A stretch of 64,000 bases of DNA, taken from positions 49,662,001 through 49,726,000 of the forward strand of contig OZ365111.1 of assembly GCA_977030845.1 (NCBI GenBank), read 5' to 3'. A program made the position numbers and the translations under genes. This document shows, in pieces, positions 5,854 to 59,100 of this stretch; the stretch's first letter is position 1, and each line of letters begins with the position of its first letter. The notes beneath the pieces are model-generated. The model saw nothing but the letters and a program-made list of their open reading frames with translations, was not told where the DNA came from and ran no database searches. The DNA comes from Fimbriosthenelais zetlandica (Eukaryota).

Positions 5854-6729
5854 GTAAAGTTATAGACAGGTGGCAATGATTGGCAGGTGGGCGTGGCATG
5901 CGGGCGTCTGCTGGAACCATCTCAGCTCTTCTACGTACCTGCATGTCTAATTGTATTTGAAACAAATTTTTAAAAAAATATTGCAAGCTTAATCTAAAAA
6001 GGCTAATTTTAAGCTTAAAATATAATATAATATCCTCAGGTTTTTTCACATGACTATGATTTTTTCTCTTTTTATTAGTGAAGCAATATCTTTGAATATA
6101 ATTATCATTATATTGGGATTTTTATCACAGAAAATACACTAGTAAGGATAGCTGACTCATATGTTAGACAGATTCATAATATTATTGCAACATATTTTGC
6201 AATACGGTGGCGCACCTGTTGACCCTCGGATTGACTCGTGACACTTCCATTAGATTAGTTTTCGCGCTATGAGCAGGACGTATAGGACGAAATCAATGTC
6301 ATTCTCATTAGGCCTACTAAAGGGGCTAAATGTCAAAGAGTTAATGTCCTCTCACATCAAGTTGGCAGAGGCCAAGGCAACCGACAGTCACATTTCTACC
6401 ATTTCAATCGTCGGTTTGGGAACAGATAAAAAAGTCCAACAGGTGGAACGGCTGCTGATAATATACAGAACAATCAAGCTTAGATAAGAGAATCTATAGG
6501 GTTTGTCATTGAGCCAGTCATACATTAGGCTACCTTCCAGTGATTGGGATGTACAAGAATCATTAATTGCTGCCCATCAGAAAGAGTAGTCTGTTCTCTG
6601 GTGCCGATAGCGTGTTTCCTACTTGTTAAGTTGGATAACAAATTGTTCCCATCCAGAGAAGATCTGTGATAGCTAAGAAATTGCTGGTTTTTAGGCAACT
6701 ATAACTCACTCATAAATGCCGTCGTCCTA

Positions 6730-6938
6730 ATCCAAGATGGCGGCGAGAAGTCTCGCGAGATAAGTCACTTAGCAACGGAATAATTACACTTAATTCGTCA
6801 TTTTATAGGTAGTAGTATAAACCTAACCCTAACATAACCCCTATAATATAAACCTTACCCAACCCCTAAACACCTAAACCTGACCTTAGTAACAGGAGGT
6901 CAAAAATCGTCTCTCGAGATTTGGCCGCCATCTTGGAT
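6730..6938. mobile_element. ~210-bp MITE-like foldback with ATCCAAGATGGCGGC terminal inverted repeats and internal telomere-like CCTAAC repeats
   Basis: Perfect 15-bp inverted repeat 6730-6744 / 6924-6938, imperfectly extended to TCTCGCGAGA / TCTCTCGAGA; interior cctaaccctaac...cctaaacctgacc. Confidence 0.7.
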
Positions 6939-11400: not shown

Positions 11401-14400
11401 TACGGTACTTTAACCTAGGTTATATATAACAAGACTCTTAATTTAAGTAACTAAATTAATTATAATTTACACTAGAGTGTTAATGCATTTAGCAGTAACG
11501 AGGTTGCACAATAGTATAATGTATGAAAATAATATATCACTAATTAATCTGTGACATTTTTCTAAGAATATATGTGACTGAATATTTTAAAAATCAGTTA
11601 CAACTGCATACAATAACGATTGATAATTAACATGGTTATTTTGGTTTTCGTGGTAATTCTGCTGCTCAACTTGCATGGCGAAATAAACCCTCAGATCTGC
11701 AATCGCTCACCATGGAGATGAGTTGATCTGAGTTAAAATCTAAACACAAATAGTAATGAATTCTGTTCTGCAAACAGGAAAGAATTCAATAATCTGGGCG
11801 ACATTGAAAGATGAAGATTTAATAACTACTTCTGGTTTAAAAATTATAATTTTTATGTTTGTATGATTTTTTTCTGGGGGGTTGCAATAAAAAACTGTAC
11901 AAAGCACCTATTAACTTTAAGCAGTGTCGAGGTTTCACTTTAACCCTTGGCTACTTTTCAAAGCACAGGTGGCTCTGCAGGGAAGCTGTTAAGGTAAGTG
12001 GTGTTAGCTCCGGGCATGGAGGGTTAACCGGCTGGCTCCTGATGCTGTCTTCTTTAGGATGTTTATTATAAAATGCTGCTTTCCTTTTATAGGAACCGAG
12101 TACTGGGGATGAGTTCAGGTATAGATGACCCAGGACAGCTCAACTGGCAGTTAGCTCTCTGTCTCTTACTCGCATGGGTCCTCATCTTCCTATGTCTTAT
12201 CAAGGGGATCAAGTCTACGGGAAAGGTATACTGAAATAATACTAAACTGTCTTTGTTGGTTTTTGATCATACTTTTCTGCATTAAAATACCAGTGTTTCT
12301 CTGGTTAGTTATGTAAAAGGCCAGCCATGTCTGCCACTGTCTGTGGTGAGAGACATGTAAAAGGCCAGCCATGTCTGCCACTGTCTGTGGTTAGTCATGT
12401 AAAAGGCCAGCCATGTCTGACACTGCATGTGGTGGGTCATGTAAAAGGCCAGCAATGTCTGCCACTATCTGTGGTGAGTCATGTAAAAGTCAGCCATTTT
12501 ATTGAAATTCCATTCCATTGCCAAAATGAGTTTTGCATTTCCGACTATATTTCATGGAGTTTTTTTTTTAGGAGTTTTCATTATTCTGACTTTATTTGAT
12601 GGAGTGTGCTGTAAAGCTTACTGTCACATTTGTTCCAGGTTGTGTATGTGACAGCTACCTTCCCATACATCGTTCTCACTATTCTGCTCGTCCGCGGTGT
12701 GACACTACCCGGGGCTGTGGACGGTTTACGTTTCTACATCATCCCAGAGTTTGATAAACTCCTCAAACCAAGGGTGCGTTACACTTAGGCCCCTCTCAAA
12801 AGTCCGCAAGATTTTTCTTCTAGATTTCAGTCCTTTCATTAAGAGCCAGACCATCATCCCACTCCCAATCTTAAATGTAACCCAACATGAGTCTAGATCC
12901 AACTGAAATAGATCTAAACTAAAAATGTTCCTATACAATCTATCTACAATACATATATTCTTGGGAAACTAATTTCCGAAATAGATCTCCCATATACTTA
13001 TTTTTCTTTTTAGAAACATGAAAATTCAAACTAGAAAATGATAACCTTTCATTTCTGTTTTCTATGCAGGTATGGGGTGATGCAGCTTCCCAGATATTCT
13101 ACTCACTAGGCCCTGCCTGGGGAATACTTATCACTTATGGCAGCTACAACCGATTCAAGTCCAACTGTCGCAGGTATTTTATATGTTCAAACCTCTAAAA
13201 AGCTAAATAAAATACATGAAACTGTATGTTCTCAGCTCAGGATTCGAAACCAGGACTTCGAATGCTAGATCAAGCTTTATTCAAATTTACCATTGTTCCT
13301 CTCTATCTCGTGCTGCTAACTGGGTTATCAAAGTCGTGCAGCCATGTCTTCGACTGCATGTCTATGGTGAGAGTACATTGTACAGACACACAGGCCGTTG
13401 TACAACCATGGGATAATGCATTATTGTGCAACCCAACTTATTCAGTTAATTAGAATGGCCCGTCCTGTCATTGCTGTATAATCCCTGAATAGAACGCATT
13501 CTTTTTGAATAATTAATTATTTAATTTCTTTATTTACAGGGACTCCATTATCTCTGCCATTGCCTGTGTGGGTACCTCTATCTATGCTGGTATGGTAATC
13601 TTCTCTGTCATGGGTTTCATGGCTAATGAGTTGGGTGTAAGCATTGACAAGGTCATGAAATCTGGTAAGTAAATGCAATTATTCAATAGTCCAATATATG
13701 TTTCACAGTAGGCTACTGTTCATCCTCCCCTCTTATATCTATTTTATAAAAGGAAAATGTCTAAAAATATTATTAGCTGTATTGCCCCTATGGTTTATTA
13801 CAAATTCCTCGATCCTTCTTTCAATTTTGATATATGTTTCTTGCATTCCATAAAGGTTGAAGAGTAGTTTTTCTCAGATTTATTTTTATGCAGGCAAAGC
13901 CAACGCGTAGGCCTATACATTGCCAGAATACTTTTCTGTCTTTTTTTGCCGCGCATTGTGATGAAAATAAGCGCTAATAGCATATTATGAGCATTAACAT
14001 ACCACATATAATTGGTACCTCTGTACTTTATGCTATGCATTCCAAATAAAAACACATGCACTCATGTTGGCACAGTAATAAGTGGGGCATACCATTAGAG
14101 TTGATTCTGTCTTGGCAGATTGAGTGAGAAACCATTCCAATTTGTCTGTGTGTCTGCTCATACTTTTCTGCATATAAAATGCCAGCCATGTCTCCCCCTG
14201 TCTGTGGTGAGTCATGTAAAAGGCCAACTATGTCTCGCATGTCTCCCACTGCCTGGTGAGAAAGACTTGCAATATCACCTACTGTCTGTGGGAAAAGTCA
14301 TGTAAAATTATCTTCTGTGAATCTAAAAATAAGAACGGGCCATTAGACTGCTTGTTTCTTTCTCATACTGGCCACTAAACACTAAATTAATGTTTTTTTG

Positions 14401-16879: not shown

Positions 16880-17432
16880 GTTGAACAGTTCTGCATATTA
16901 TTGTTGTATTAAAAATGTATATCTTATTTTTCTACACAATTTGCCTCATGTACAGGGCAGAATCGTTCATTTCATTCAACTTTGTGATGTATAAATAAGG
17001 CCAATGTCGTATCCGATTCTAATTGTTGATATTGACATCTTAATAAGTATTAGTTTGCTTTTTTAGGGGAAAAGAGGGATTTTATTTCTGACAGCTACTT
17101 GCCGTTGAATCTCATACTTAATAAGAAGTGCACCCATGTGAATATAAGGGTTTAGGAGGTAATGCAAATTGGACAGACTTATTTTAATGTACAGATCGGA
17201 CACACGTATATATATATTGTAAAAAAATAAACAAAATCTGTAATAAATTTTTTTTCAAAACTTGAGTTTCTTTGTGTTCTTGGCATAAAAAATGTTTGGT
17301 TTCAGCATTAAATTTTCCATAATTGGTTTTTGGACCTTTTTGTATAATTCATAATAAAGAAAGAAACCTGGATCCCAAAATTATTATGACATTCTACCCC
17401 TCCGGGTTATTAGGCCTACCCTACATCGGACA

Positions 17433-17503
17433 GGGTAGACCAGGAATCGAACCCCGGTCTCTGGCGTTGCAGGACAGTGTCTTACCTCTAGACTACCTGG
17501 CTC
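17433..17503 (-). mobile_element. tRNA-like sequence (degenerate tRNA-Cys(GCA)-like or SINE head)
   Basis: Minus strand: A box TAGTCTAGAGG, intact D stem gtct/agac, anticodon loop ctGCAac, B box GGTTCGATTCC; acceptor stem pairs poorly. Confidence 0.65.
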
Positions 17504-25980: not shown

Positions 25981-27492
25981 ATGGAATATCTTGGACACAC
26001 ACGCACAGCTTCCTACATGACCGGACCTAGAGTTGGAGGGATGGGAGCACCAACCTTCCTCCCCTCCATCTCCACAATGGGATCGTCCAACAAGCCTTAC
26101 GATACGTACCCAGCACCATCGCCACTACGTCGCTCCCTTACGACCCTTCCATGGCGGCCAAGCACCTACTACAGCTCTGCTCGAGTAGAACCAACCATCC
26201 CTGTCAACCGTAGCATGCCAGGAGCCCATGTCATGACAGAGCTTGACAGTGCCAAGGTACCTCCTGTCTTTGCTGCTGCTAGGAACGCTCTGTACACCCG
26301 TTACACTCCTAACGATTGGATGGCGTCCAACAGCTCCCAGTACATGACATCAGATCGCGTCCGTAGCGGCGCCGCATGCGTGCGATATGACACCGACAGA
26401 TTAGTAAGGCAAGTTGACGATTTGACACGCAGCACACAGAGTGACGTCGGCAAGAAGCTGGGAGAACGACTAGGTGACATTCACTTCTGGAAGACGGAGG
26501 TAAGCAATGAAACTGACAGCGCTATCACAGAGATTGACACCCTAGTACGATCCAAGACCATCCTAGAGAAGACCCTAGTGAAGACTGAGAACCCACTACA
26601 CATCGCCCAGGAGTGTCTCTACAACAGGGAGAAGCGCCAGTCAATCGATCTGGTCCATGATAATGTCGAGAAGGAGCTCATCAAGGAAGTTGACACTATC
26701 AAACGCTGTCAGGAGGAGATGAGGAGGCTCATCCAGGATGCTAATAACCAGATTGCCACGAGCCGCGCTGGGCAGCATGAGCTAGAGAAGGACCACCGCG
26801 ACAAGAACTCAGCTCTGCATCTTGATAATACATGCCACCAGCTGAGAAACAGCTCCCGTGGAATCGCCTACTACGATGGTATTGATCGGGTTGACAATGC
26901 CATCTCAGTACCTCAATCCTGGGCTCGTTTCTCTAATGATAACATCCAGCGTTCCCAGTCTGAGCGCGCTGGCTCCCGAAACATGAGGAACATGATCGAG
27001 GCCCTCCTGAACAAATGTGCCACGGCTATGGTTAACCAATGGAACACAGTCAACAGTGCCTTCACCGACCGCATCCGTGAATACATGGATGCCAAGAACA
27101 AGCTCCAAACCCATCTCTCACAGGTTCTTCAGGAGATCTTTGATATGGAGAAGAATATCGAGCTCCTGAAGAAGTGTATTCAGGATAAGGAGGCGCCTAT
27201 GCAGGTCGCACAAACCCGGTTGTCCACACGAACCCGCCGACCTAATATTGAGGCCTGCAGGGATCCCGTACAGCATCGGTTAGTGGCGGAGGTAAATGAG
27301 ATCAACGGAACCGTCGAGTCACTCCGAGCTAAACTCAGGGAGGCTGAGAATGCCCTCCAGCATCTGCTCCGCACCAAGAGCTCCCTGGAGCAGGATCTCT
27401 CTGTAAAGAATAACTCACTATTCATGGATAGGGAGAAGTGTATGGGGATGCGCAAGACCTTCCCTATGTCACCAAGAGTATCAGCCTACTGA
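25981..27492 (+). CDS. TEKT3: Tektin-3/5 family filament protein, intronless, 503 aa
   Basis: Uninterrupted ORF. AARNALYTRYTPNDW, LGERLGDIHFWK, PLHIAQECLYNREKRQSIDLVHDNVEKEL, signature variant RPNIEACRD, DLSVKNNSLFMDREKCMGMRKTFP. Confidence 0.93.
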   Translation: MEYLGHTRTASYMTGPRVGGMGAPTFLPSISTMGSSNKPYDTYPAPSPLRRSLTTLPWRPSTYYSSARVEPTIPVNRSMPGAHVMTELDSAKVPPVFAAARNALYTRYTPNDWMASNSSQYMTSDRVRSGAACVRYDTDRLVRQVDDLTRSTQSDVGKKLGERLGDIHFWKTEVSNETDSAITEIDTLVRSKTILEKTLVKTENPLHIAQECLYNREKRQSIDLVHDNVEKELIKEVDTIKRCQEEMRRLIQDANNQIATSRAGQHELEKDHRDKNSALHLDNTCHQLRNSSRGIAYYDGIDRVDNAISVPQSWARFSNDNIQRSQSERAGSRNMRNMIEALLNKCATAMVNQWNTVNSAFTDRIREYMDAKNKLQTHLSQVLQEIFDMEKNIELLKKCIQDKEAPMQVAQTRLSTRTRRPNIEACRDPVQHRLVAEVNEINGTVESLRAKLREAENALQHLLRTKSSLEQDLSVKNNSLFMDREKCMGMRKTFPMSPRVSAY

Positions 27493-32000: not shown

Positions 32001-33486
32001 GTCATCCCTCGTTCCTTCTAACAATACACCTTTCAATTTAACCCTGACTTAAACATAACTCTCTCTGACGCAGAAGGTTAATAACCTATAACTTTTAAAA
32101 AAGCTTGAGTGACTGCTTGAATGAAATTGAATATACAAATTGCTCTTGCTCTTTCCTTTCATGAACAGTCCTATATCGCGTGCACTCAGGGGATCTGGAT
32201 GATTGGTTATGTCCATATCGCCTATGCTATTGTGGGATCTGTTACATCTCTTGCCAGTTCCAAACTCCTCAAGAAATATGCGAACAGCCGCCTTCCTGTC
32301 ATCTTCACGGGTATTATTCCTTTATTTTCCTTTTAAGGCCTTGCTCCACTGGAGGGGCTGATTTTGGAGAGTGCTCGTCTTTACAACAAGGCAACTGGGA
32401 TATCAAAGGCCAGCCATGTCCCCCATTCTCTATGGTGAGTGGCATGTAAAAGGCCAGCCATGTCTGTCACTGTTTGTGGTGAGGCATGTAAAAGGCCAGC
32501 CATGTCTGCCACTGTTTGTGGTGAGGCATGTAAAAGGCCAGCCATGTCTGCCACTGTTTGTGGTGAGGCATGTAAAAGGCCAGCCATGTCTGCCACTGTC
32601 TGCATTGAGATGTATGTAAAAGAACCATATTGAAGTATTTCGAGAGAGGTGGCTCGTTTTAGTTTGGACACGAGAGTGCATGAACAAGTTACTGTTTCCA
32701 CTTTCAGTGATGTTGATTGATCTTGGTAGTCAACTGGCTCTTCTGTTCTGGAGACCGAGATCGGATTCATTATGGATCCTTGTTGTCCTTTCATCTCTAT
32801 TTGGTGGCACGATTGGAATATGGTGCACATATGTTAGTGGTGAGTAGTGACTTATAATGGGTGCCAAGGTTCCATTAGTTCCTTAAGTAAATTAGGATGC
32901 GCCACTATTTAATATTAAATGCTGGTATCCGAAAATAACTGGCACTTCTGAATCCTGTCATATTGTAACAACTATTACAAAATGTTTGAACGGTTTGAAA
33001 CCCCAATGATCTGGTCAAATTGTGTAACACATTATTTAAGTTACATGGTAATGTAGTCGATTTCAGATTATATTTGTATTAGTGACTTGTCATTGTAAAG
33101 AGCTGCAGTGGCTATAAATCTTGTCATACAAATATCTCTTCCTATTTCCAGCCATATATGGTGCTGTGTTCACTAGCAATACCGAAGCCGCCTTCTCTCT
33201 CAACGTCAAATGTGTTTCTCTAGGCTCGGCGTTTCTCTACTGCTGTTCTTACTTTCTGTGTGTATCAACTAAACTTCTTATTCTCATGGTCATCCTGGTG
33301 CTTGGCGTTACTGGTTACTTTACTGTTGAAATACTCGACAAAAACAAGAGGAAAAGCCAGCCTCGAGAAGGCGGGAACACTGTGATCGAGGAATGCAAGC
33401 TCGCCGAAAATACTAAATCAGATTTGAAGATGGACAAGGAGCAAGATACTGTAGAAAAGATGTTAGAAGAAGATAAAAAAGATTAA
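29056..33486 (+). CDS. UNC93A: UNC-93-like MFS membrane protein, copy 1 (~500 aa)
   Basis: Exons 29056-29181, 30199-30394, 30641-30817, 31052-31212, 31615-31848, 32169-32310, 32708-32839, 33152-33486; phases consistent, no internal stops. Motifs KNILL, LQSSIN.EKGIG, ANGY, IWVSQGSY, NLVSS, CGARDCP, WRP, TEAAFS. Confidence 0.88.
29455..29722 (-). mobile_element. Frameshifted non-LTR retrotransposon ORF2 fragment (C-terminal part of RT region)
   Basis: Across frameshifts reads VKYLGHFI / GKDMRDDKDIMRQCRHLHA / GN..CRKFNMCSEAV...LWW....KLCVAYNNAFRMLMKLPR, a typical LINE post-RT pattern. In intron 1 of copy 1 only. Clade not resolved. Confidence 0.8.
32390..32665 (+). mobile_element. Deu/Nin-domain-like SINE remnant with internal 42-bp minisatellite (~5 units), UNC93A copy 1 intron 6
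   Basis: Leader aactgggatatcaaaggccagcc, near-identical 42-bp core units, then atgtaaaagaaccatattgaagtatttcgagagagg. Confidence 0.75.
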
Positions 33487-34743: not shown

Positions 34744-37700
34744 ATGTTGGAGGATGAAATGGAAAGTGACAAGATGTGTCAGCGAGAAAGGAACAAAGAA
34801 AAGAGGAGAATTATGAAGAATATACTGCTATCGGGAGTTGTAATACACCTGTTGTGTGTCGCTTTTAGGGTAAGCAATATTTTATTGTTGCTAAACCAGT
34901 GGATTCTCAATGTAAGATGACTTGCTTAGTAACACCTCACATCAACTCTGCATGCGTGCATACAATGTTACTGGAATAACAAAATAAGTTGGAAAATTTG
35001 CATTGGATTATTATTACAGGTTATACAAAAAAGTGTTACACCATTTAACAAATGTACAAATACCCTAGGATAATACAGAATACACTATAGCTCTCTTTTA
35101 GTATGTATGGTACCTAATATTGAGGGTTTTAAAATGATTTTTCATTGACAAGATTTTACTTGCTATTTCCAGATACCCTACAGACTCCAGAGTACTATTA
35201 ACAGAGAGAAGGGAATAGGAGTGATCACTGTGGGACTAAACTACGGTGTCTCCGTGCTATCATGTTTATTTATAACCAAAGTCTTCACGTCGAAAGTTGG
35301 TCATAGAAAAAGTTTTCTCACAGTGGCTTTTACCCTCGGTAGCTGGATACTGGCTAACGGATATGCTGGTATGTAACTTTAGTGTTTATGGTCCTTCATT
35401 TCTTTAGGGTTAAACTGGCACTTAAATCAATCTTGTCCATGTACACAAAGTCAAAAGTGCCATTTTTAGTACATCACTGCGTTGTCACATGTCAGCTGAC
35501 TTCCTGCATTTTGGCCAGCCAATGCCCATCCAAGAATCTGGGTCAAACTAACATAGATTGACCCAAAGTGGGTCATCGCTGATTGGTAATATTGGCACCT
35601 CAACAGCAATGCATGTTCAGAACTTTTTCATCAGAAGTTGACTCTGATTTTGCACCCTAATATCCCATATTCAATTACGTTCATATCAGATACGATCAAT
35701 TCAGAATCATGAGGATCATTCAATGTTTTCCTATCTTCTTCAGTGTGGGCCACTATGATTCCAGGAGCCGTTTTGTTAGGTTTGGCTACAGGTTTTATAT
35801 GGGTTGCACAGGGATCTTACAGCACCCTCTCAGCCGTGAGATATGCTGAACTCACAGACACCCCTGTCAAAGCTATACTTTTCATGTTCTTTGGGATCGC
35901 CTATGCTTTTAGAACGTCAAGTAAGTTGGTATTTCAATAAGATGTATAGGCACGAAATCACTGGTATCACAATTCAAAGGAGTTGCGATTCGAATAGGGA
36001 ATTTTAGGATTCTAAAAATATAAACTGTACAAGAATATTTCACTTATAATTTGTATAGGAATTATTTTGTTCAATCATTTTCCATATGAAATTGCATGTA
36101 CATGTATAATAAGTTTGATCCTATATCTGATTTTCCTGCTCAAAATGATTCTACATCAAATGTAGGTAATCTCGTCAGTTCGGTTCTTTCATCAACCATA
36201 CTACAAACAGTTCCTGCTAATGTTACCATAGAAACCAATGAGACAGTCCTGGCGACATGTGGTGCTAGAGACTGTCCTGGTACTAATAAATCCAACCTAA
36301 ACCTGGAAAGACCACCAAGCTATGTGGTAAGCTATACATACCTCAAACAGGAGGCCCAAACATTCAAACCTTAAAATGTCATCGAGTAAAATTTTATTTT
36401 ACAACCAGATACTCATATATATAAAGGGACATATACAGGGATTGTTGCGGGAAAGTGTAAACGGAAAGATGAAATACTGACCATCTTGATATAGAGGACT
36501 ATCTAGATAGAGGTTACCAGAATTTGCCCAGACGTCTACTCTTGGAATTTTTAGCAGCTGGGTAAATTGTAGGCCTAGTATGTCTGCAGCTCAGAACATT
36601 GTGCATTACAGGTACCAAATTTCTAGGTTCTGCCTATAGGCAGGACGAGTTGTACCAATTCAATTAGAGAAGGCACCCTGCGATGGCAGGAAGGGCATAT
36701 AAGCATGGTATACCATGGTTGTCTGGCAGGTTAATTTGACAGTTTTGTGCTTCTCCGTTTGAGCATGGATGGAGTTTAATTCTACTTTCAGATCTGGATT
36801 TTGCTTGGTGTTAGTGTCGGACTTTGTGTCATAGCTGCATGTATATCCATGTTCCTAATGGACGATGCACCCAAAAACCCCAACGCTGATAAAGAGAAAG
36901 AGGATTGGAAGAATGTGTTTACGTCAACCATTAAACTTTACCGATACAACGAAGCTTGGTTGCTATTCCCTTTGGCTTTTTATCAGGGAATGCAACCGGC
37001 TTTCATTGCGTCGGAATTTGGCAAGGTATGTTTAAGTAAATAACATTTGTGAGAAAATCCTGGTAAAATCACTTGACTGCTTGAATGAAATTGATTATCT
37101 ATTCTTGCTCTTGATTTAAAAGATTTTCCTTTGAACAGTCCTATGTCGCATGCACTCAGGGGATCTGGATGATTGGTTATGTCCATGTCGCCTATGCTAT
37201 TGTGGGATCTGTTACATCTCTTGCCAGTGCCAAACTCCTCAAGTCTTATTCTAGCAGCCGTCTTCCTGTTATCTTCACAGGTATATTTCTCCCATTCTCT
37301 ATACTGAGAGGCATGTAAAAGGCCAGCCATGTCTGCCACTGTCTATGGTGATAGGCATGTGAAAGGCCAGCCATGTCTGCCACTGTCTATGGTGAGAGGC
37401 ATGTGAAAGGCCAGCCATGTCTGCTACTGTCTATGGTGAGATGCATGTGAAAGGCCAGCCATGTCTGCAACTGTCTATGGTGAGAGGCATGTAAAAGGCC
37501 AGCCATGTCTGCCACTGTCTATGGTGAGAGGCATGTGAAAGGCCAGCCATGTCTGCCACTGTCTATGGTGAGAGGCATGTAACAGAACCAGTGCTATATT
37601 TCGAGAAGAGCAGGGCTGTTTTTGGTATGGACAAGAGAGTACATGAACAATTTCCACTTTCAGTGATGTTGATTGATCTTGGTAGTCAACTGGCTCTTCT

Positions 37701-50138: not shown

Positions 50139-53100
50139 ATGATGAAACAAGTGAGCCCGTCAGTGGACATGCCGCTTGTCACGTCCCCGCTCATCCACAA
50201 CGCCATGCCGTCCAGAATAGGCCCACCAAAACCCCTCATGAAAAACATGACTGGTATCTTCCTGGGAACAGTAAGTTCTACATTTTTATAAATTTTAACA
50301 TTTTGCTCGATCATCTTATAAACTCTACTGGTAGGGTTTCAAGATGGAGATAGTTTACTAAAAAAATCCTAAGGAAAAATTAAAAAAAAAAACGGGAAAA
50401 AAAATGTCTGCAAACAAGCCTAGCTGGACTGTTACAAGCCTCACCTGTGTTAACGCTTATACCCAGGAAATTTGACCTTTAATATTAATTACCATATAAT
50501 GTCCATGATGGTTATTCATATAGAAAAGAATGCGTAAGTTGTTATTTTTTTTCCATTCAAAGTTCTTAATGAATATTTCTGTGCATGGCAACGACGCCTG
50601 TTTCTGTTATCCTGTTATTAATGTGTTTTTTTGCGCTCCTTTTGCTACAATGTAAACCCTGTATATTGTACCTACTCATAAAATATAGATTAAATTTAAA
50701 ACTAAAATAATTAATAATAATATATTTATTTAAGGATGAACACAGGAATTATCCGGCGACCAAGAAGATTGTGCCCCCTCTGGCACGGGTACGTGTGCCC
50801 ACCAAACGATCACGCACCCCCACAGAGGAACGCAGATACGTATGTCAAATTATTACTTTTATATTCACAATTACCCCTCAAAATCTAAATAAATTATAAT
50901 GGTATTAAATTTTAATCAGAGACTCGGAGATTATTCCCAACCTTTAAACATAGACATAGAATTCTATGTTTATGCTTTAAAGTAACAAAAACAAAATAGA
51001 AAGTTTCGCCTCAGTGGCGGCCACTGGAAGAACAAACCGGAACTAAATTGTTCAATTCCACAGTACATGCCTACAGTACATGTATTTGTAAATGACGTAC
51101 TGCAAATTTGAAAATAGCAACTGTTATTTCTGAAAAGGTTACTTTCTATCCTAGGATTTGTTAGTATTTTCAAAAGTATATGGCTATTAAAAAAATAAAT
51201 ATTGAACTTAACTTTGCAGATTGAAGATGATAGTGATTACTGTTGGCAATTGCCAGTAAGATTGATAATTTTGGCTGTGATTTGAACATTTCATTTTGTG
51301 TTCATTTTTTGTGATATCTTCATTTTTTTACTACTTTTAATAAGGTTCATCAAAGGGATGAGCGGCTAGAATATCGACTTCTCTTTGTACAATGTAGGCC
51401 TAGTCGCAAAACAGCGAAATAATATATGTTACTGTTCAGATTTGTTTTACTTTGTTTTTCACGAGTCCATTTGGAAAGTTATTACAGTAAATTAGATACG
51501 CTTAGGCTAAGTCGTTTTGAGAAAAACAAACTGCATGGCTTACCCCATGATTTAAAAAGATTTCTTTTACCAATAATTAAATCTTACATATTATACTATC
51601 TGCACATTTCTAATATACAGTTTGTTTTACATTATTCTAGTTTTATTTCATTTCTCATGTATTCTTGTTTTATTTTATTTTCTATATATATGATCCACCG
51701 CGACCCTTCTTCCCGCATCAATATATTGACCGCTCCTCCACAACCCTTACTATTGTCACTACCCCACCCTGGCTGACCAATGACTAATTCAACACTGGAC
51801 ATTGGCTGACCATTACCTGGCCCTGACCTGTCCATCTACCACCTGTCCCTCCACATATCTCACCTGCCTCTCACCTAAACATGGTGTCATGGACCACCCA
51901 CCATCCCTACCCGCCCCTCCTTAACTCTTACCTTTTCCATTTTCATAAATTTTAAATATTATTTTGTGTGATATAAAATCAAAATTGGATGTTAAATTTT
52001 TTTGGGATGATATTTACCATCACTATTCTTTTGTCAAATGTTGAAATACTTTTGTTTGAAATACTTCGCATTTATCTGTTTAAATATTGTATAATCCTTT
52101 ACATAAAATTACATTCGTAATATTTTATTAAAATCACAATAACTATTGGCAACTTTTTCTCAACTTAAATCTATTTCATATAAATTCAAATGGGCTCATT
52201 ATGGCACTGCATATTTTATGGCCCTGTATATTTTATGGCACTGTATCCTTCATTCCCATAAAATATCAATATATTTTGTTTTCAATGATTTGTAAAACAC
52301 AGACAGATTATTCTGATGCGCTTTGTCTTCTCTATGTCTTATCTACGACTGAACCTGTGACCATACCTAACCTGCCATCCATGCCGCCATCTCGCTATCC
52401 ACTCCACACACCGCAGAAAATGGTGGAATTACTCCGCTACAAAGATGAACGTAGGGGCTTCAGTGGAAACCCTGTCAAGGTATAACATTTTTTTCCAATC
52501 GTTACTACTTTTCGTGTTTTGACAGCAAGATAAGCTCACGGGTATATTCAATACATCATACATAGCAGATCCAAACTTTATCCACACAGATATTTTAGAA
52601 CTCCTATAGTTTGTACTTGTTTCTGCACAAGATTTGAATATGATTAACAGTAAAACACACAATTATTTTTGATTTCTTTTTCAGAGGCGGACCCCTTCAG
52701 CCACTTCTGTTCTGGATGCGCCTCCGCAGAATACCGCCCCCTCACTTGTAGAAGATGAAGATGTGGCTATTTGGGATCTTTGCAGGTAAGTGTATTTTAA
52801 ATATGATTTTTATGTTCAAACTTTACTGTTCAGAATTTAATGATCAACTTGATTATGGAATGTCATGGATTCATTCAATTCCAATTTGAAGCGTAATTCA
52901 AATCTACCATATTCCTACTCCCCGATTGCTGTCACTGGGCTATCAAAAGCCAGCTATGTCTCCCACTGTCTATGGCGAGAGGCATGTAAAGGCCAGCTAT
53001 GTCTCCCACTGTCTATGGCGAGAGGCATGTAAAGGCCAGCTATGTCTCCCACTGTCTATGGCGAGAGGCATGTAAAGGCCAGCTATGTCTCCCACTGTCT

Positions 53101-56100
53101 ATGGCGAGAGGCATGTAAAGGCCAGCTATGTCTCCCACTGTCTATGGCGAGAGGCATGTAAAGGCCAGCTATGTCTCCCACTGTCTAGGGCGAGAGGCAT
53201 GTAAAGGTCAGGTATGTCTCCCAATGTCTATGACGAGACGCATGTAAAAGGCCAGCCATTTCTCCAACTTTCTATGGCGAGAGGCAAGTAAAACGCCATC
53301 CATGTCTCCCACTGTCTATGGCAAGAGGCACGTAAAAGGCCATCCATGTCTCCCACTGTCTATGGTGAAAGCCAGAGGCATGTAAAAGGCATGTAAAAGT
53401 ACCATACAGTCAGAGAGCGTAACCAGAGAGTATAGTACGAGAGTATGATCAGATTATGTTCAGAGAGACTGGGTATAGCTATAGAGAGTATGGTTAGAGA
53501 GTGTGGTCAGATTATGTTCAGAGAGACTGGGTATAGCTATAGAGAGCATGGTTAGAGAGTATGATCAGATTATGTTCAGAGAGACTGGGTATAGCTATAG
53601 AGAGCATGGTTAGAGAGTGTGGTCAGAGAGTATGGTGAGAGTACAGAGAGAGGTGTCATTAGTGCTGGTCTCCGGTTTCTCCATGATCATGTAATATGAA
53701 ACCTTACAGAAACATGATAGAGTTCATCCAGAACTGGGGTACAGGTAAACCTTGTTAAACCAGCACCTCACTAACACGACCACCCCACGGATAAAAACTC
53801 ACAGATAAAGACCGACCGCCTATCATTCAGCCAAAATTCATTTTTACACCTTGGAAAAACACTGTCAAACCTGAATATATTTGAATAAATTAAGCAAAGT
53901 TTAGCATGCCATAAAGTGGTTGAATTATAATCTGTAAGAATTCATGTATTTTCAGACAGACTCAGAGGCATTTTACTGCGGCCACCAATTCTGGTGTCAC
54001 ACATCTAGAATACCTCAATCCTGACGCTGACGGTGGTATGACGTCACATGACCGTGACGCCTTCACCGTACCTCTGTCATCAACTTTAGCGAGCGAGGTG
54101 CATCGCTTAGCCTCCCACAGACAACCTGACACAGCTCAAGGCCTCATAGACTGCTACAAGAAAGTCTGCAAGGTAATTCTTTAAATTCATTTTCTTTAAA
54201 TTGAATCTTTAAATTCAGCTTACTTCAACTTTGATCTGTCCGTACATGTAGCTACAGGATCTGTCAGAGCTGTTGGTAGCGATCGATGAATTTTCGTTTT
54301 TTTTCCCTGACATCCCATGCCCCTTTTAAGATACAAAATCCTGGGTAAGCCCCTCTTGATACATATATTTAGGGAAGATTCCATGAATATTTTGTTAAAT
54401 TCTCATCTCATTTACTTGCAGGGAAATAAAGAAGTACTACAGCACCTTCTGCCTTCAAGGTCAATGAAAGAAGGGCAAACAAAGAGTGGACAGAACTACA
54501 ACTACACCGGATTTACTGTCAAGTAAGGCTCACCTTACTTGATAAAACCCCAAAATCTCTGTATGAGACAATGATAAGTGATAGAGTCGCTTTAAGGCCT
54601 TGGGCGCATGATGTAATTTTGGTGTAATGCAGTACTTAGAGACTTTTGTCCTTGGGTTGGAATGTCTTTTTGGACCATCTCCATCTCTTCTGGGTTTGTT
54701 TAAACCTTATAAGGGGCAGATCCAATGGGGAGGTCAAGGACTCAGGACTTAGCTGTACTACCCCCTACCCCGACATTCCTTAGAGCTTTTTTTTAATATC
54801 AATGTCCCTAATCTTTCCGAAGTATCGTCATTTTCTTAAATTTATCTTCATCTTCTTCCAACTTTATGTGCCTGATTATTCTTATTATGTATCTGATTAT
54901 TCTGAGGTCTCCTTTGTGGAGAAATAATTGCATTACTGGTATTTATAAAGCTGTTCTGTTTTTATCATTACAGGAGTTATAGGAACCCTAACCAGGCTGA
55001 TATACAGGCTAACTTCTCACCTCCCCTGCCCTCTGAACCCGCCTCACGACCCCGTACCACAGCCCACCACGACCCTTCACGACCCTACATACCCAGTCCT
55101 TACTTCTTTAAAAGTTACAGCCCGCCTCAAAAACCTACCAGCGCCAACCAGAAGGGCGCCATCCACACCTCCCCCAGGCCGGCTTATGATGGTAAGTTTA
55201 TTCATATTGCAGGCAGTATAGTGTTGATGTGGGAGGCCACAGGTTCAATTCCCGAAGCTGCATCCAAATTTGACATTTTTAGTGTTGATAACTAGGTTAT
55301 AAAATGCCAGCCTGGCCATATCTCCCACAGTGGTGAAAGAAATGTAAAAGACCAGCTACGTCTCGCACTGTCTATGCTGAGAAGCATGTAAAAAGCTAGC
55401 CATGTCTCTCACTTTCTTTCTTGAGAGGCTTGTAAAAGGCTAGCCATGTCCCACACTGTCTATCGTGAGAGGCATGTGAAAAGCCAGCTATGTCCCCACT
55501 GTCTATGGTGAGAGGTATGTAAAAGGCAAGACATCATGACTTCCATTGTCTGTCCTGAGAAGCATATGAAAGGACAGATAATGTATAAGGATTGCCACGT
55601 CGATTTCCAGGGTGCAACCAGTCTTTTCCTGGGTGATGATGCACGGTGGCTAATTTGCATTGACGTCATTGCATTTAGCGGCGTTAAGGCTTACTATTAT
55701 CTACTATTGTGTCCTCAACATAACCCGCTAACCAGCCACCCAGAAAGGTCGGGTTACTCATGCTAAAATTAGCCCTTTTTGACAGATTGCTTTGGCTATT
55801 TATAATTCACCCCCGCTATATTAAAGCGGCTCTATCACTGATCTTTTCCTTGTACCTAGGCTCAGAACTCGGCATTTTATAATCCACTGAGTGATTTTAT
55901 TTTGGAAAGGATTGAAATTCTAATTGTAACTGATAGGATTGGTGCACGGCATGATGTAACTTTATATAAACCCCTGAATAGTGTTAATTGCAAATTAATT
56001 AATCTTTGAAGCTTTGGGGATCTCAGGTTTGGGATATTTGCAGTAGCCTGACTCGAATTAATGTTCATTTAAAAATAATCTAAGAAGCTTTGGGGTTATT

Positions 56101-59100
56101 TTGAGTTGGCTGACCTTAATCCCAATGTGTGTACAATGTAAAATCCATTGGGAAAACGCTCTGGAGTAGAGAGTATTGTAATTAGGCGGACTGGACTTAA
56201 TCTAAATGATAATAAGATTCTAGGCTGAGAGGGAAAATTAGGTTAGGTGTCTGATTTAGAACAAGACTTGGGGGATTGAAGCCAAAGCTAACACCTAAAA
56301 TACTGGTAATGGGTAGAGCACCCTCCCCTTACACCGTCCATATTAGATAATATTTCCATGATTCGATCAAAGTAAACTATGCTAGCTTACTGACAATGCC
56401 CATACCATACAAAGTCCTCTGGAATGCTCAGGGCATGCCGATCATGTATCGGAAGATGATTTTACTCCAGTTATGAAACCCATTCTCTCTAATTTAATAC
56501 ATTTTCTGCGCTGATTCTGGAAATGCTGAATGCCATCAAAAGTCCTTAGTGGGTCAGTGTCTTTCAATGATTCAGTCAAAGGGTTGTTGGGAATGCAATT
56601 ACTGGAGTGTGAGGAGCAAATTGAATGTTAATTTGATTAGTTTTTCCATGGTATAGTTAAATGTGAAGAGAAAATTATAGTGATTATATAGTTGTAGCGA
56701 ACCTGAGATCCGTTGCTAATTTCAATTACATGAAATCCCGACTTTAGCCCAATATGCGTTTTATCTGTTGAAAATTGGAATTGAACCAGGGACCTCTCAC
56801 ACTCAAGTCAAACACTCTATATCCCATGAGTCACGACCCCATCCGTATTGTGAGTAATTATGCTTATTTTAAACCCCCAAGTTTTTCAAAATGAAGTTTT
56901 AAGGATGTCGTGATCTGACTTAGTCAGTCCCTGATTACATATTCCTAACGAGCTGACGAAGCTGTAAAGAAACCGTAAGCTCTATGGGGGGTGTAGTCAG
57001 GTGGTTACTATGGTAACCTGATAGGTGGTAGAAAAGTGATCCGGGTTGTGAGAGTGTGCCATGTTAACACCTTCACTGAAGGAACAGATCCATGAGCATT
57101 AAGATTTCATAATGACGCACCTTGGATTTGTTTTGACGGTGCGAATTATAATGCATCACCCAGTGCTGCTAACTGGGATATAAAGGCCAGCCATGGCTCC
57201 CACTATGAGAGGCATGTTAAAGGCCAGCCATGGCTCCCACTCTAGTGACCGTCTATGGTGAGAGCATAGGCATAAAAAAGATGTCTATGGTGAGAGGCAT
57301 GTGAATGGCCAGTAATGTCTCCCACTGCCTGTGGTGAGAGCCGTGTTATAGAGAACAATTGCTACTATTCAAAAAGCAGGCCACTCGTGCTGGCCATTGG
57401 GTGCTGGATGTTAGCCAATCTTGCACCATAATCTGTATTAAATATTGAATTTTCTCACATTCTTTGAATGACGAAATACACATCAACTCAAGTGATTTTA
57501 CATTGACCTTTCAGTCAGTCTTCTTCAGGCTTGGAACTTTAGATATTTTTCTCTTAATTTTTCAGTGTATCATTGATACTTTTGATTTTTTTTTTTAAAT
57601 TTGGGTTTTGCATGTTTTTCAATTAATAACATTAATGAAAGTTCGATATATTCTCGGTCAATTTTAAACGAAATATTTGGGGTATTTCGGTTGTAATTCA
57701 GAAATAAATTCATAAGAAAATGTTTAACATTTGAGGCTTCATAGCCTTCATTTAATTGTAGCCAACACTAAATGTGTCAATTACCATATTGAGTTACAAT
57801 ATTCCCCTAGCAGCGGTATTGTGTTTGATGAAAGTTTTGTGGCTGTCAATGGTAATATTGATATTTACAGAGCCTCGTATCGGGGTAGCTCCAGGGGCCG
57901 GTGTTTTGTCACGGTCGTTAGGCAGGAGTCGTCAGGACAACTCCCCACATAACAACACCCCACTCAACATGGAGGTTCTCCATGGTAACGGTTATACGAC
58001 ACACAAGGTAAGCAATTCACTCTCAATTAATACACAAGTCATTTAAGGCCAAGGAAGGGGAAGGGGCTGGAAGAGAAGGTGAGGGAGAGAGGGAAGAAGG
58101 GGTGAAGAGTAGTAGAGGAAGCGGAGCTTAAGCCGGGACTCTACTGCTGCGATTTTGTTTGCGACAAGTCTGCGACAAAGGTGATGCTTGTGTTTCAATG
58201 ATAAATTTACCATTGGAGGACGGCCTTAAGGCCTTGGACACTTGAACCACAATTTATAAATTTTATTCTTACACAACTTCACAAGCATCACCTTTGTCGC
58301 GGTAGTGTCGCAAGCAAAATCGCAGCAGTGGAGTCCCGGCTTTACTCTCAATTAAACCATTTAATGCCAATGATGGAGAGATGTGGGAGAGAGGGGAAGG
58401 AGAGAAAGATGGGAGAGGAGGGGCGGAAGGAAAGACAGGGGAAGGAAAGACCGGACTCGAAATCGATCCGTCCTGTACCCAAACTAAACCCCGCTCCCAT
58501 GTGCACCCCCTTATATCATTCATGTAGGCTTTTTGGACCAACATTTTTTATTAGCTTATTAGCTCTCTAGTATGCTGGAACTTACCTGTAAGGTGAAATG
58601 TTGAAGTTTAATTGGTGTTATACTGAGACCTTTCCGAGAGTGGTCGAGGTGTAATAACTAACTTAATGACGTATATATGTATATGTATGTATATTAGTAA
58701 TGACGTAGGCCCTGCTCTGCCTACTTGGAATTTCTTATTAGCAACTAATTACCCGTATCTTGCAACTTGTTTATTGCTCTTGATATATTTCCTGCAAGAT
58801 TATAAGTAATATAAGTGTCCCTTTTCCTTGCTATAGACATTATCGTTTGAAGCCTCAGATCCATAGTCTTGAGTGTAATCGGTCAATATGGGACTATCAA
58901 ATTGGGCTTAGATAACAAATACATGGCCAAAATGTTGACTTAAAACTATTCTTAACTTTTCAAGGAGGTTGAGAGAATTTTCTTTTTAATTCGTAAGATT
59001 GAATTAAAAATAGGGCCTATAGTTCCTATATTCTAATAACATAAAAAAATCTAAGCCTAAAATTTTCCTGATTTTCAGCCCGTGTAGAATAAATCACCCG

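What the first reader, a model, noticed from the sequence alone, without database searches (positions are those of the whole stretch)
37310..37615. The minisatellite appears to be an internal expansion of a Deu/Nin-domain SINE
Seen: arrays share a leader (gctgctaactgggatataaaggccagcc) and a tail (gcatgtaacagaaccagtgctatatttcgagaagagcaggg here; variants at ~32610-32660 and ~57340-57375), and one array follows a + strand tRNA B box (55242). Established, from memory: the Deu/Nin SINE domain contains a segment like atgtaaaagatcccatggcactattcgaagaagagcagggg, preceded by a segment loosely resembling one repeat unit. Inference: the repeat unit is a piece of this ancient conserved SINE domain that amplifies in tandem after insertion, making the SINE a minisatellite seed.
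Basis: partly seen in the sequence, partly recalled or inferred. Interest (0 to 1): 0.7.

Follow-up and report, generated by a model that had tools for sequence, protein, structure and literature searches.

The report
SINE core that seeds minisatellites
A family of short jumping elements in this worm-like animal carries a 44-letter hairpin segment, just before a core also found in jumping elements of corals, and that segment has multiplied in tandem at thousands of sites: a new example of a known way in which mobile DNA gives birth to minisatellites.

Summary
Window 37298-37580 is a 44-bp x 6.4 minisatellite, followed by a short tail. It is one of eight window copies of a dispersed family.

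Genome-wide, with up to 3 mismatches and reversed-pattern controls of 0, I counted:
- about 2,500 leader-unit junctions
- about 1,280 unit-tail junctions
- about 21,600 unit-unit junctions

The carrier looks like a tRNA-derived SINE. It has a conserved B box and a weak full-length tRNA match, no inverted ends, and ragged 5' ends.

About 40 nt of the tail also sit inside tRNA-headed SINEs on more than 120 metagenome contigs, apparently cnidarian. Only one chance hit turned up in 596 Gb of prokaryote assemblies. By position and known phylum range this is most likely the Nin part of the Deu domain. No named reference sequence was available, so the name is inferred.

Upstream of that block, similarity to the foreign SINEs is weak. 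The unit counts as part of the domain only by position, a shared hairpin and flanking direct repeats.

Arrays demonstrably change where they sit: private variants, paralogous introns with 42- versus 44-bp units, and segmental duplicates with 7 versus 9 units. However, a two-unit form also transposed as such.

SINE-derived satellites are already known in squamates. The scan had noted this family elsewhere in this genome (s1-219953).

The parts
37298..37580 (+). The finding's array: 44-bp unit x 6.4. Its left edge has replaced the SINE leader.
37581..37617 (+). Remnant of the conserved SINE core block (tail), cut off at the same point as in the paralogous copy
32388..32404 (+). Leader remnant of the paralogous copy
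32405..32599 (+). Paralogous array, mostly 42-bp units x 4.6; same insertion as 37298, diverged after the gene duplication
32600..32660 (+). Tail (core block remnant) of the paralogous copy
12298..12497 (+). Array of 42-44-bp units x 4.7, with neither leader nor tail recognisable
13235..13385 (+). Single-unit copy: B-box-like head end, linker and leader, one unit, decayed tail
14177..14310 (+). Degenerate copy with 2-3 units
52900..53410 (+). Leader remnant, array 52945-53365 (six near-identical 43-bp units with private variants, then older 44-bp units), and a short tail remnant
55207..55565 (+). The most complete window copy: tRNA-like head with B box at 55242-55252, linker and leader, and a degenerate array at 55342-55565
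57156..57410 (+). Leader (exact at 57165-57192), degenerate array 57182-57345, then a tail with the core block
6540..6740 (+). Relative with no unit: the leader end is joined directly to the core block, followed by the longest 3' part seen in the window

Best explanation
The arrays are internal expansions of a tRNA-derived SINE family. The basic element reads: tRNA-like head with B box, a linker of about 45 nt ending in the leader, one 44-nt segment, then a core block of about 40 nt (it starts AAAGAACC and ends GAGAAGAGCAGG) and a further 3' part. The core block is shared with tRNA-SINEs of cnidarian-type DNA and is most likely the Nin part of the Deu domain. The 44-nt segment folds into a 10-12-bp hairpin. 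In single-unit copies it lies between two imperfect direct repeats 44 nt apart (about 11 of 16 positions alike; one is the end of the leader, the other the start of the core block). I infer that misalignment between these repeats first duplicated the segment, through replication slippage or unequal exchange and perhaps helped by the hairpin. Ordinary minisatellite dynamics then enlarged and homogenised the arrays, most strongly near chromosome ends. Shown: the family structure, the cross-phylum block, and change in place after insertion. Inferred: the Nin name, the role of the direct repeats and hairpin, and the recombination mechanism.
For: Family structure:
- Conserved left and right flanks in 30 fetched loci.
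- 2,514 leader-unit, 1,278 unit-tail and 21,600 unit-unit junctions, with reversed-pattern controls of 0.
- B box conserved; relaxed ARAGORN tRNA-like calls (-ps70/-ps80) mostly end at about the same position, 127-132 of the 200-nt head segment; the Rfam tRNA model aligns full length at 14.4 bits in the best head.
- No inverted ends.

Core block:
- The pattern taken from our tail hits at least 120 metagenome contigs, all inside tRNA-headed SINEs.
- One such contig carries a gene whose nearest clusters are cnidarian.
- In 596 Gb of prokaryote assemblies there are 11 hits: 10 are the same SINE and 1 is chance. There are none in viral contigs.
- The window's own genome has 23 hits, control 0.
- Of the nine conserved SINE domains (HCDs) tabulated, only Nin and Meta are recorded in both Annelida and Cnidaria, and the Meta domain sits directly after the head.

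Hairpin and direct repeats:
- A hairpin lies directly 5' of the block in our element, the coral type, L103 and L074, each with a different stem sequence.
- One coral-type copy has a perfect 63-bp x 2 duplication at the same place.

Change in place:
- 11 locus-private variants are shared by two or more units, against 0.55 expected (at most 5 in 1,000 shuffles). Higher-order patterns appear within arrays.
- The paralogous introns carry 42- versus 44-bp units.
- The duplicate loci L009 and L014 carry 7 versus 9 units.
- Long arrays lie in the terminal 15% of the five largest contigs in 21 of 21 cases, against 34 of 89 leader junctions.
- The deletion product with no unit exists but is rare.
Against: - No named Deu or Nin reference sequence could be compared.
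- Outside the 40-nt block, profile searches in both directions found nothing: nhmmer gave 0 hits, and weak hits did not cluster next to the block.
- Local alignments gave p >= 0.07. Only a gap-tolerant alignment to one reference reached p 0.004-0.03.
- RNAalifold found no consensus structure, and single-sequence fold z-scores are weak, from +0.2 to -1.8.
- Units from different loci are 90% alike against 93% within a locus, so much of the uniformity is family-wide.
- A two-unit form was transposed as such.
- About 80% of well-kept copies already have two or more units (59 versus 15).
- Target-site duplications, the 3' end and a LINE partner were not found.
- The hits are a best-scoring subset and partly clustered duplicates, so the test of position along chromosomes is not clean.
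Confidence: 0.72

Rival explanations
1. The arrays are mainly inherited. Source elements carry a variable internal repeat, as in SVA elements, and unit number is set at or before retrotransposition, for instance by reverse-transcriptase slippage on the hairpin. Change in place is only a minor addition.
For: Ten near-identical two-unit copies lie on six contigs. Unit identity between loci is 90% against 93% within loci. Multi-unit copies outnumber single-unit ones 59 to 15 at equal stringency. A G-to-A variant of the unit recurs as the last unit at several loci.
Against: Locus-private variants and higher-order patterns occur. Paralogous and duplicated loci differ in unit length and number. Long arrays concentrate near contig ends while leader junctions do not. 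Only 1-2 exact three-unit copies exist, and no shared larger structure was seen.
Confidence: 0.2
2. The 44-nt unit is a lineage-specific linker that merely lies next to the conserved core. It is not a diverged piece of the conserved domain.
For: There is no significant similarity of leader plus unit to the coral-type SINEs. Another copy in this genome joins the head almost directly to the core block, with neither linker nor unit (L006).
Against: The last 8-9 nt of the unit continue the conserved block in L074 and L103. A hairpin lies at the same place in four element types. The gap-tolerant alignment to L103 gives p 0.004-0.03. The foreign elements also have a direct repeat on both sides of this segment, and one has duplicated it.
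Confidence: 0.25
3. The shared block belongs to a conserved SINE module other than Nin/Deu, such as Meta or an unnamed one.
For: No named reference was compared, so the name comes from recall and from the table of phylum ranges.
Against: The Meta domain is 66 bp and lies directly after the tRNA head, whereas in the coral type about 95 nt separate head and block. Two conserved stretches around a variable 15-20-bp region match the published description of Nin-DC.
Confidence: 0.15
4. The carrier is a DNA transposon derivative (MITE, Helitron or Helentron) that spreads an internal satellite, as in oysters.
For: Target-site duplications and a LINE tail were not shown. Many copies lack 3' parts.
Against: The head is tRNA-like with a B box. 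No inverted ends were found. The 5' extents are ragged. The foreign relatives are plain tRNA-SINEs.
Confidence: 0.04

Closest known systems
[quoted passage not shown]
   Same: A tRNA head followed by a conserved central block. That block recurs in tRNA-SINEs of cnidarian-type DNA. The pattern of two conserved stretches around a variable region fits the published description. The domain is already recorded in annelids.
   Different: Here the segment just 5' of the core is multiplied in most copies. Only about 40 nt are demonstrably shared. No reference sequence was compared.
SINE-derived satellites of squamate reptiles (Vassetzky et al. 2023, PMC10702118)
   Same: Tandem repeats made from part of a SINE, with end units that run on into ordinary SINE sequence. 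There are many loci, partial homogenisation, alternating dimer patterns and a preference for chromosome ends.
   Different: A different phylum and SINE family. The unit is much shorter (44 bp). The amplified piece abuts a conserved central domain. Most copies of the family are affected rather than a minority.
SVA-type composite retrotransposons with an internal variable repeat (from general knowledge)
   Same: An internal repeat whose length varies both among source elements and at fixed insertions.
   Different: SVA is a composite element without a tRNA head. Here the repeat arose inside a classic tRNA-SINE.
Tandem-like arrays of whole conserved-domain SINEs in bivalves (PMC11481361)
   Same: SINEs with conserved domains that form tandem structures, often in introns.
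   Different: There whole elements, or elements plus their target-site duplications, are repeated. Here it is a 44-bp internal piece.

Membership tests
tRNA-derived SINE | [quoted passage not shown] | tested here: met
   The B box is conserved in at least 10 heads and an A-box-like word is present in some. The Rfam tRNA model aligns full length at 14.4 bits in L016. Its E-value is 2.4 across 4,227 families, or about 6e-4 for the single prior hypothesis. Relaxed ARAGORN calls (-ps70/-ps80) mostly end at about the same position, 127-132 of the 200-nt head segment. No single head reaches the Rfam threshold.
tRNA-derived SINE | High copy number, dispersed on both strands | tested here: met
   2,514 leader-unit junctions (1,296 forward, 1,218 reverse), control 0.
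tRNA-derived SINE | Target-site duplications | not tested
   The copies held are old or truncated.
tRNA-derived SINE | LINE-derived 3' region with a simple-repeat or A-rich end | tested here: inconclusive
   Three copies share a 3' part. No LINE with that end was present in the 360 kb held.
Deu/Nin SINE superfamily | Significant similarity to named Nin or Deu reference domains | not testable with these tools
   Dfam and Repbase were not available, paper supplements were not held, and no printed sequence was found.
Deu/Nin SINE superfamily | Central block shared by SINEs of distant phyla | tested here: met
   At least 120 metagenome contigs carry the block inside tRNA-SINEs. One contig carries a cnidarian-type gene. 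The chance rate is about 1 hit per 596 Gb.
Deu/Nin SINE superfamily | Similarity over about 120 bp (Nin) rather than a short motif | tested here: inconclusive
   Only about 40 nt are clearly shared. The flanks are not significant, except nominally against L103.
SINE-derived satellite or minisatellite | Tandem units identical to an internal SINE segment, with end units that continue into SINE sequence | tested here: met
   Leader and tail flank the arrays at many loci. Single-unit copies exist.
MITE / Helitron-borne satellite | Terminal inverted repeats or Helitron termini | tested here: not met
   No inverted repeats flank three copies. Helitron termini were not specifically tested.

The most novel reading that the evidence does not exclude
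The conserved SINE domain may itself carry a built-in misalignment site: a hairpin bracketed by a short direct repeat that is kept from cnidarians to this worm. That site would explain two things at once. It could be why such domains act as points of module exchange between SINEs, a published but unproven idea. It could also explain why, in a genome prone to minisatellites, one SINE family turned into thousands of arrays.
Probability: 0.2. Interest if true: 0.6.

Novelty: new member of a known kind. Interest (0 to 1): 0.45.

Why it matters
It extends SINE-derived tandem repeats, so far documented convincingly in squamates, to an invertebrate. It also gives an unusually complete series within one genome:
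- the form with no unit
- the single-unit form
- a transposing two-unit form
- arrays of many units, including one locus spanning more than 3 kb

The breakpoints sit at the edge of a deeply conserved SINE domain whose function is an open question. In practice, about 1 Mb of this genome (about 21,600 unit junctions x 44 bp) can be annotated as one family. Many copies lie in introns, and all eight window copies are in introns, sense to their genes.

Tried and rejected
- Paper supplements with SINE consensus sequences were not held. The Piskurek and Jackson paper is not held. Full-text searches for sequence words found nothing useful.
- ARAGORN at default settings and Rfam at gathering threshold found no tRNA at the heads.
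- Profiles built from the foreign upstream and downstream regions found nothing in this genome's sample, and the reverse search showed no clustering next to the block.
- Local alignments were not significant.
- RNAalifold on ten sequences gave no consensus structure, because the stems were misaligned.
- A search for the SINE's 3' part, or a LINE partner, in the held DNA found only the three seed copies. A genome search with one tail found 6 places, and no loci could be cut out.
- The Atlas search did not resolve the window's own phylum. That the genome is annelid-type rests on earlier notes of the scan.
- The contrast in chromosome position between single-unit and multi-unit copies is only a trend: 4 of 10 against 29 of 42 in the terminal 15% of the contig, counted by hand and not formally tested.

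Full report
**Observation.** The stretch 37298-37580 is a clean minisatellite: period 44, 6.4 copies, 94% matches (sequence). The same unit forms arrays at 12298, 32405, 52945 and 55342 and degenerate runs at 14177 and 57182. A 24-nt unit core with up to 3 mismatches occurs 29 times in the window, always on the + strand, where shuffles give none. The quoted leader and tail are exact at only one place each, but recognisable variants flank the other arrays. The B box at 55242 is there.

The arrays at 32405 and 37298 are one insertion, not two. They occupy the same position in the same intron of two tandem gene copies, and the tail is cut at the same base in both.

**The family.** A genome search with the copy at 57140-57430 gave over 1,330 candidates.
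- In the 30 loci fetched, the DNA left of the arrays aligns as the end of a tRNA-like head with a conserved B box, a linker of about 45 nt, and the leader.
- The DNA on the right aligns as a core block, about 30 further conserved bases and, in a few copies, a longer shared 3' part.
- Junction counts with up to 3 mismatches are 2,514 leader-unit, 1,278 unit-tail and 21,600 unit-unit. Reversed-pattern controls are 0. That is roughly 8-9 unit junctions per leader and about 1 Mb of DNA.
- The best-kept head aligns end to end with the Rfam tRNA model at 14.4 bits. This is weak across all families but meaningful for a single prior hypothesis.
- Relaxed ARAGORN calls (-ps70/-ps80) on eight heads end at about the same position, 127-132 of the 200-nt head segment.
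- No inverted ends were found, and the 5' extents of copies are ragged.
- Together this is the anatomy of a tRNA-derived SINE.

**The conserved core.** I took a pattern from our own tail: AAAGAACC, a gap of 9-13 nt, then TCGARAAGAGYAGG.
- Every hit lies inside a tRNA-headed SINE, and 53 of 78 usable hits form one family.
- One contig carries a BTB-BACK-PHR gene whose nearest Atlas clusters are cnidarian.
- The same pattern finds 11 places in 596 Gb of prokaryote assemblies. Ten are that same SINE in contaminated bins and one is a chance palindrome. It finds none in viral contigs.
- In the window's genome it finds 23 places, against 0 for the reversed pattern.
- The block is therefore a genuine SINE module shared across phyla.

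On the name: of the nine conserved SINE domains (HCDs) tabulated, only Nin and Meta are recorded in both Annelida and Cnidaria, and Nin is the roughly 120-bp part of the Deu domain. The Meta domain lies directly after the head. The coral-type elements have about 95 nt between head and block. Nin-DC is described as two conserved stretches around a variable 15-20-bp region. Nin is thus the best reading, but I could not align a named reference. That this genome is annelid-type comes from earlier notes of the scan, not from a test here; the Atlas search left its phylum open.

**Is the unit part of the domain?** Direct sequence evidence is thin.
- Profiles made from the foreign upstream or downstream regions find nothing in this genome's sample.
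- Our profiles do not land next to the block in the foreign contigs more often than chance.
- Local alignments give p of 0.07 or more.
- A gap-tolerant alignment reaches p 0.004-0.03 for one reference (L103), p 0.015-0.38 for L074 and p 0.03-0.46 for the coral type. The other three references are not significant.

Three observations do favour it.
- The last 8-9 nt of the unit continue the conserved block in L074 and L103.
- All four element types fold into a hairpin ending right before the block, each with a different stem sequence. The fold z-scores are weak, and RNAalifold could not align the stems.
- In single-unit copies the segment is bracketed by an imperfect direct repeat, about 11 of 16 positions alike, which is the leader end and the block start. 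The foreign elements have a comparable repeat. One of 106 coral-type copies carries a perfect 63-bp x 2 duplication of exactly that segment.

**When do arrays grow?** Change in place is shown.
- 11 variants private to a locus are shared by two or more of its units, against 0.55 expected (at most 5 in 1,000 shuffles).
- Several arrays show alternating or block-wise patterns of variants and of 40-, 42- or 43-bp units.
- The two paralogous introns now hold 42-bp and 44-bp units with different fixed variants, and one has lost its leader.
- The duplicated loci L009 and L014 hold 7 and 9 units.
- The best-scoring long arrays lie in the terminal 15% of the five largest contigs in 21 of 21 cases, against 34 of 89 perfect leader junctions (Fisher p about 1e-7). 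This sample is not random and is partly clustered.

Inheritance also plays a part.
- Ten near-identical two-unit copies are scattered over six contigs, so that form transposed as such.
- At equal stringency, 15 copies have one unit and 59 have at least two.
- Exact three-unit copies number only 1-2.
- Units from different loci are 90% alike, against 93% within a locus.
- Copies with no unit, the expected deletion product, are rare.

**Mechanism and rivals.** The most likely course is as follows. A single-unit SINE spread through the genome. Misalignment between the bracketing repeats duplicated the hairpin segment many times independently, and at least once in a source element. Unequal exchange or slippage then enlarged the arrays, especially in distal chromosome regions, and gene and segmental duplications copied them further.

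The main rival is that arrays are chiefly set during retrotransposition. The private variants, the diverged paralogues and the position effect weaken it, but it is not excluded as a contributor. A DNA-transposon carrier is unlikely.

**Comparison and novelty.** SINE-derived satellites with the same architecture were described in squamates in 2023 (units taken from a SINE segment, with end units that run on into SINE sequence). The authors left open whether they occur elsewhere. Bivalve SINEs with conserved domains form tandems of whole elements.

This case is a new member of that kind. It comes from another phylum, has a short unit that abuts a deeply conserved domain, and affects most of the family. 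Earlier notes of this scan flagged the same family on another piece of the genome (s1-219953) and on this window (s1-188380), and they describe the genome as rich in minisatellites in general.

Noticed in passing
window 12298-57410: All eight copies of the family in the window are on the + strand, the strand of the genes whose introns hold them. Genome-wide the two strands are balanced (1,296 versus 1,218). The unit contains a GGTGAGA word that resembles a 5' splice site.
   Followed up: partly
window 53425-53641: A second, unrelated minisatellite (58-bp unit x 3.5, 93% matches) starts 60 bp after the array at 52945-53365.
   Followed up: no
window 17432-17502 (-): A tRNA-like sequence passes the Rfam threshold (32.7 bits) but ARAGORN does not call it. 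It may be the head of a different SINE or a decaying tRNA gene.
   Followed up: no
window 25981-27492 (+): An uninterrupted 503-aa reading frame encodes a tektin (Atlas score 0.98, all best hits in Pfam family Tektin). It is possibly an intronless or retrocopied gene.
   Followed up: no
window 6819-6885: A degenerate repeat of CCTAA/CCCTAA type, like an interstitial telomere repeat, lies about 100 bp after the SINE relative that has no unit.
   Followed up: no
G000:C19:35404741-35408011 and G000:C1:409260-705886: A locus spanning more than 3 kb matches the unit array throughout. On C1 a run of same-strand arrays lies 15-100 kb apart within the first 1.2 Mb. Both suggest satellite-like growth and spread by local duplication near chromosome ends.
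   Followed up: partly
L171-L175, L177-L181 (CBDDTI01 and CBDAUV01 records): Two public assemblies labelled as bacterial genomes from metagenomes contain coral-type tRNA-SINE copies. This points to host DNA in those bins.
   Followed up: no
L149 1065-1193: A coral-type SINE copy carries a perfect 63-bp x 2 duplication of the segment just 5' of the conserved block. Nested inside each copy is a 15-bp x 2 duplication.
   Followed up: yes
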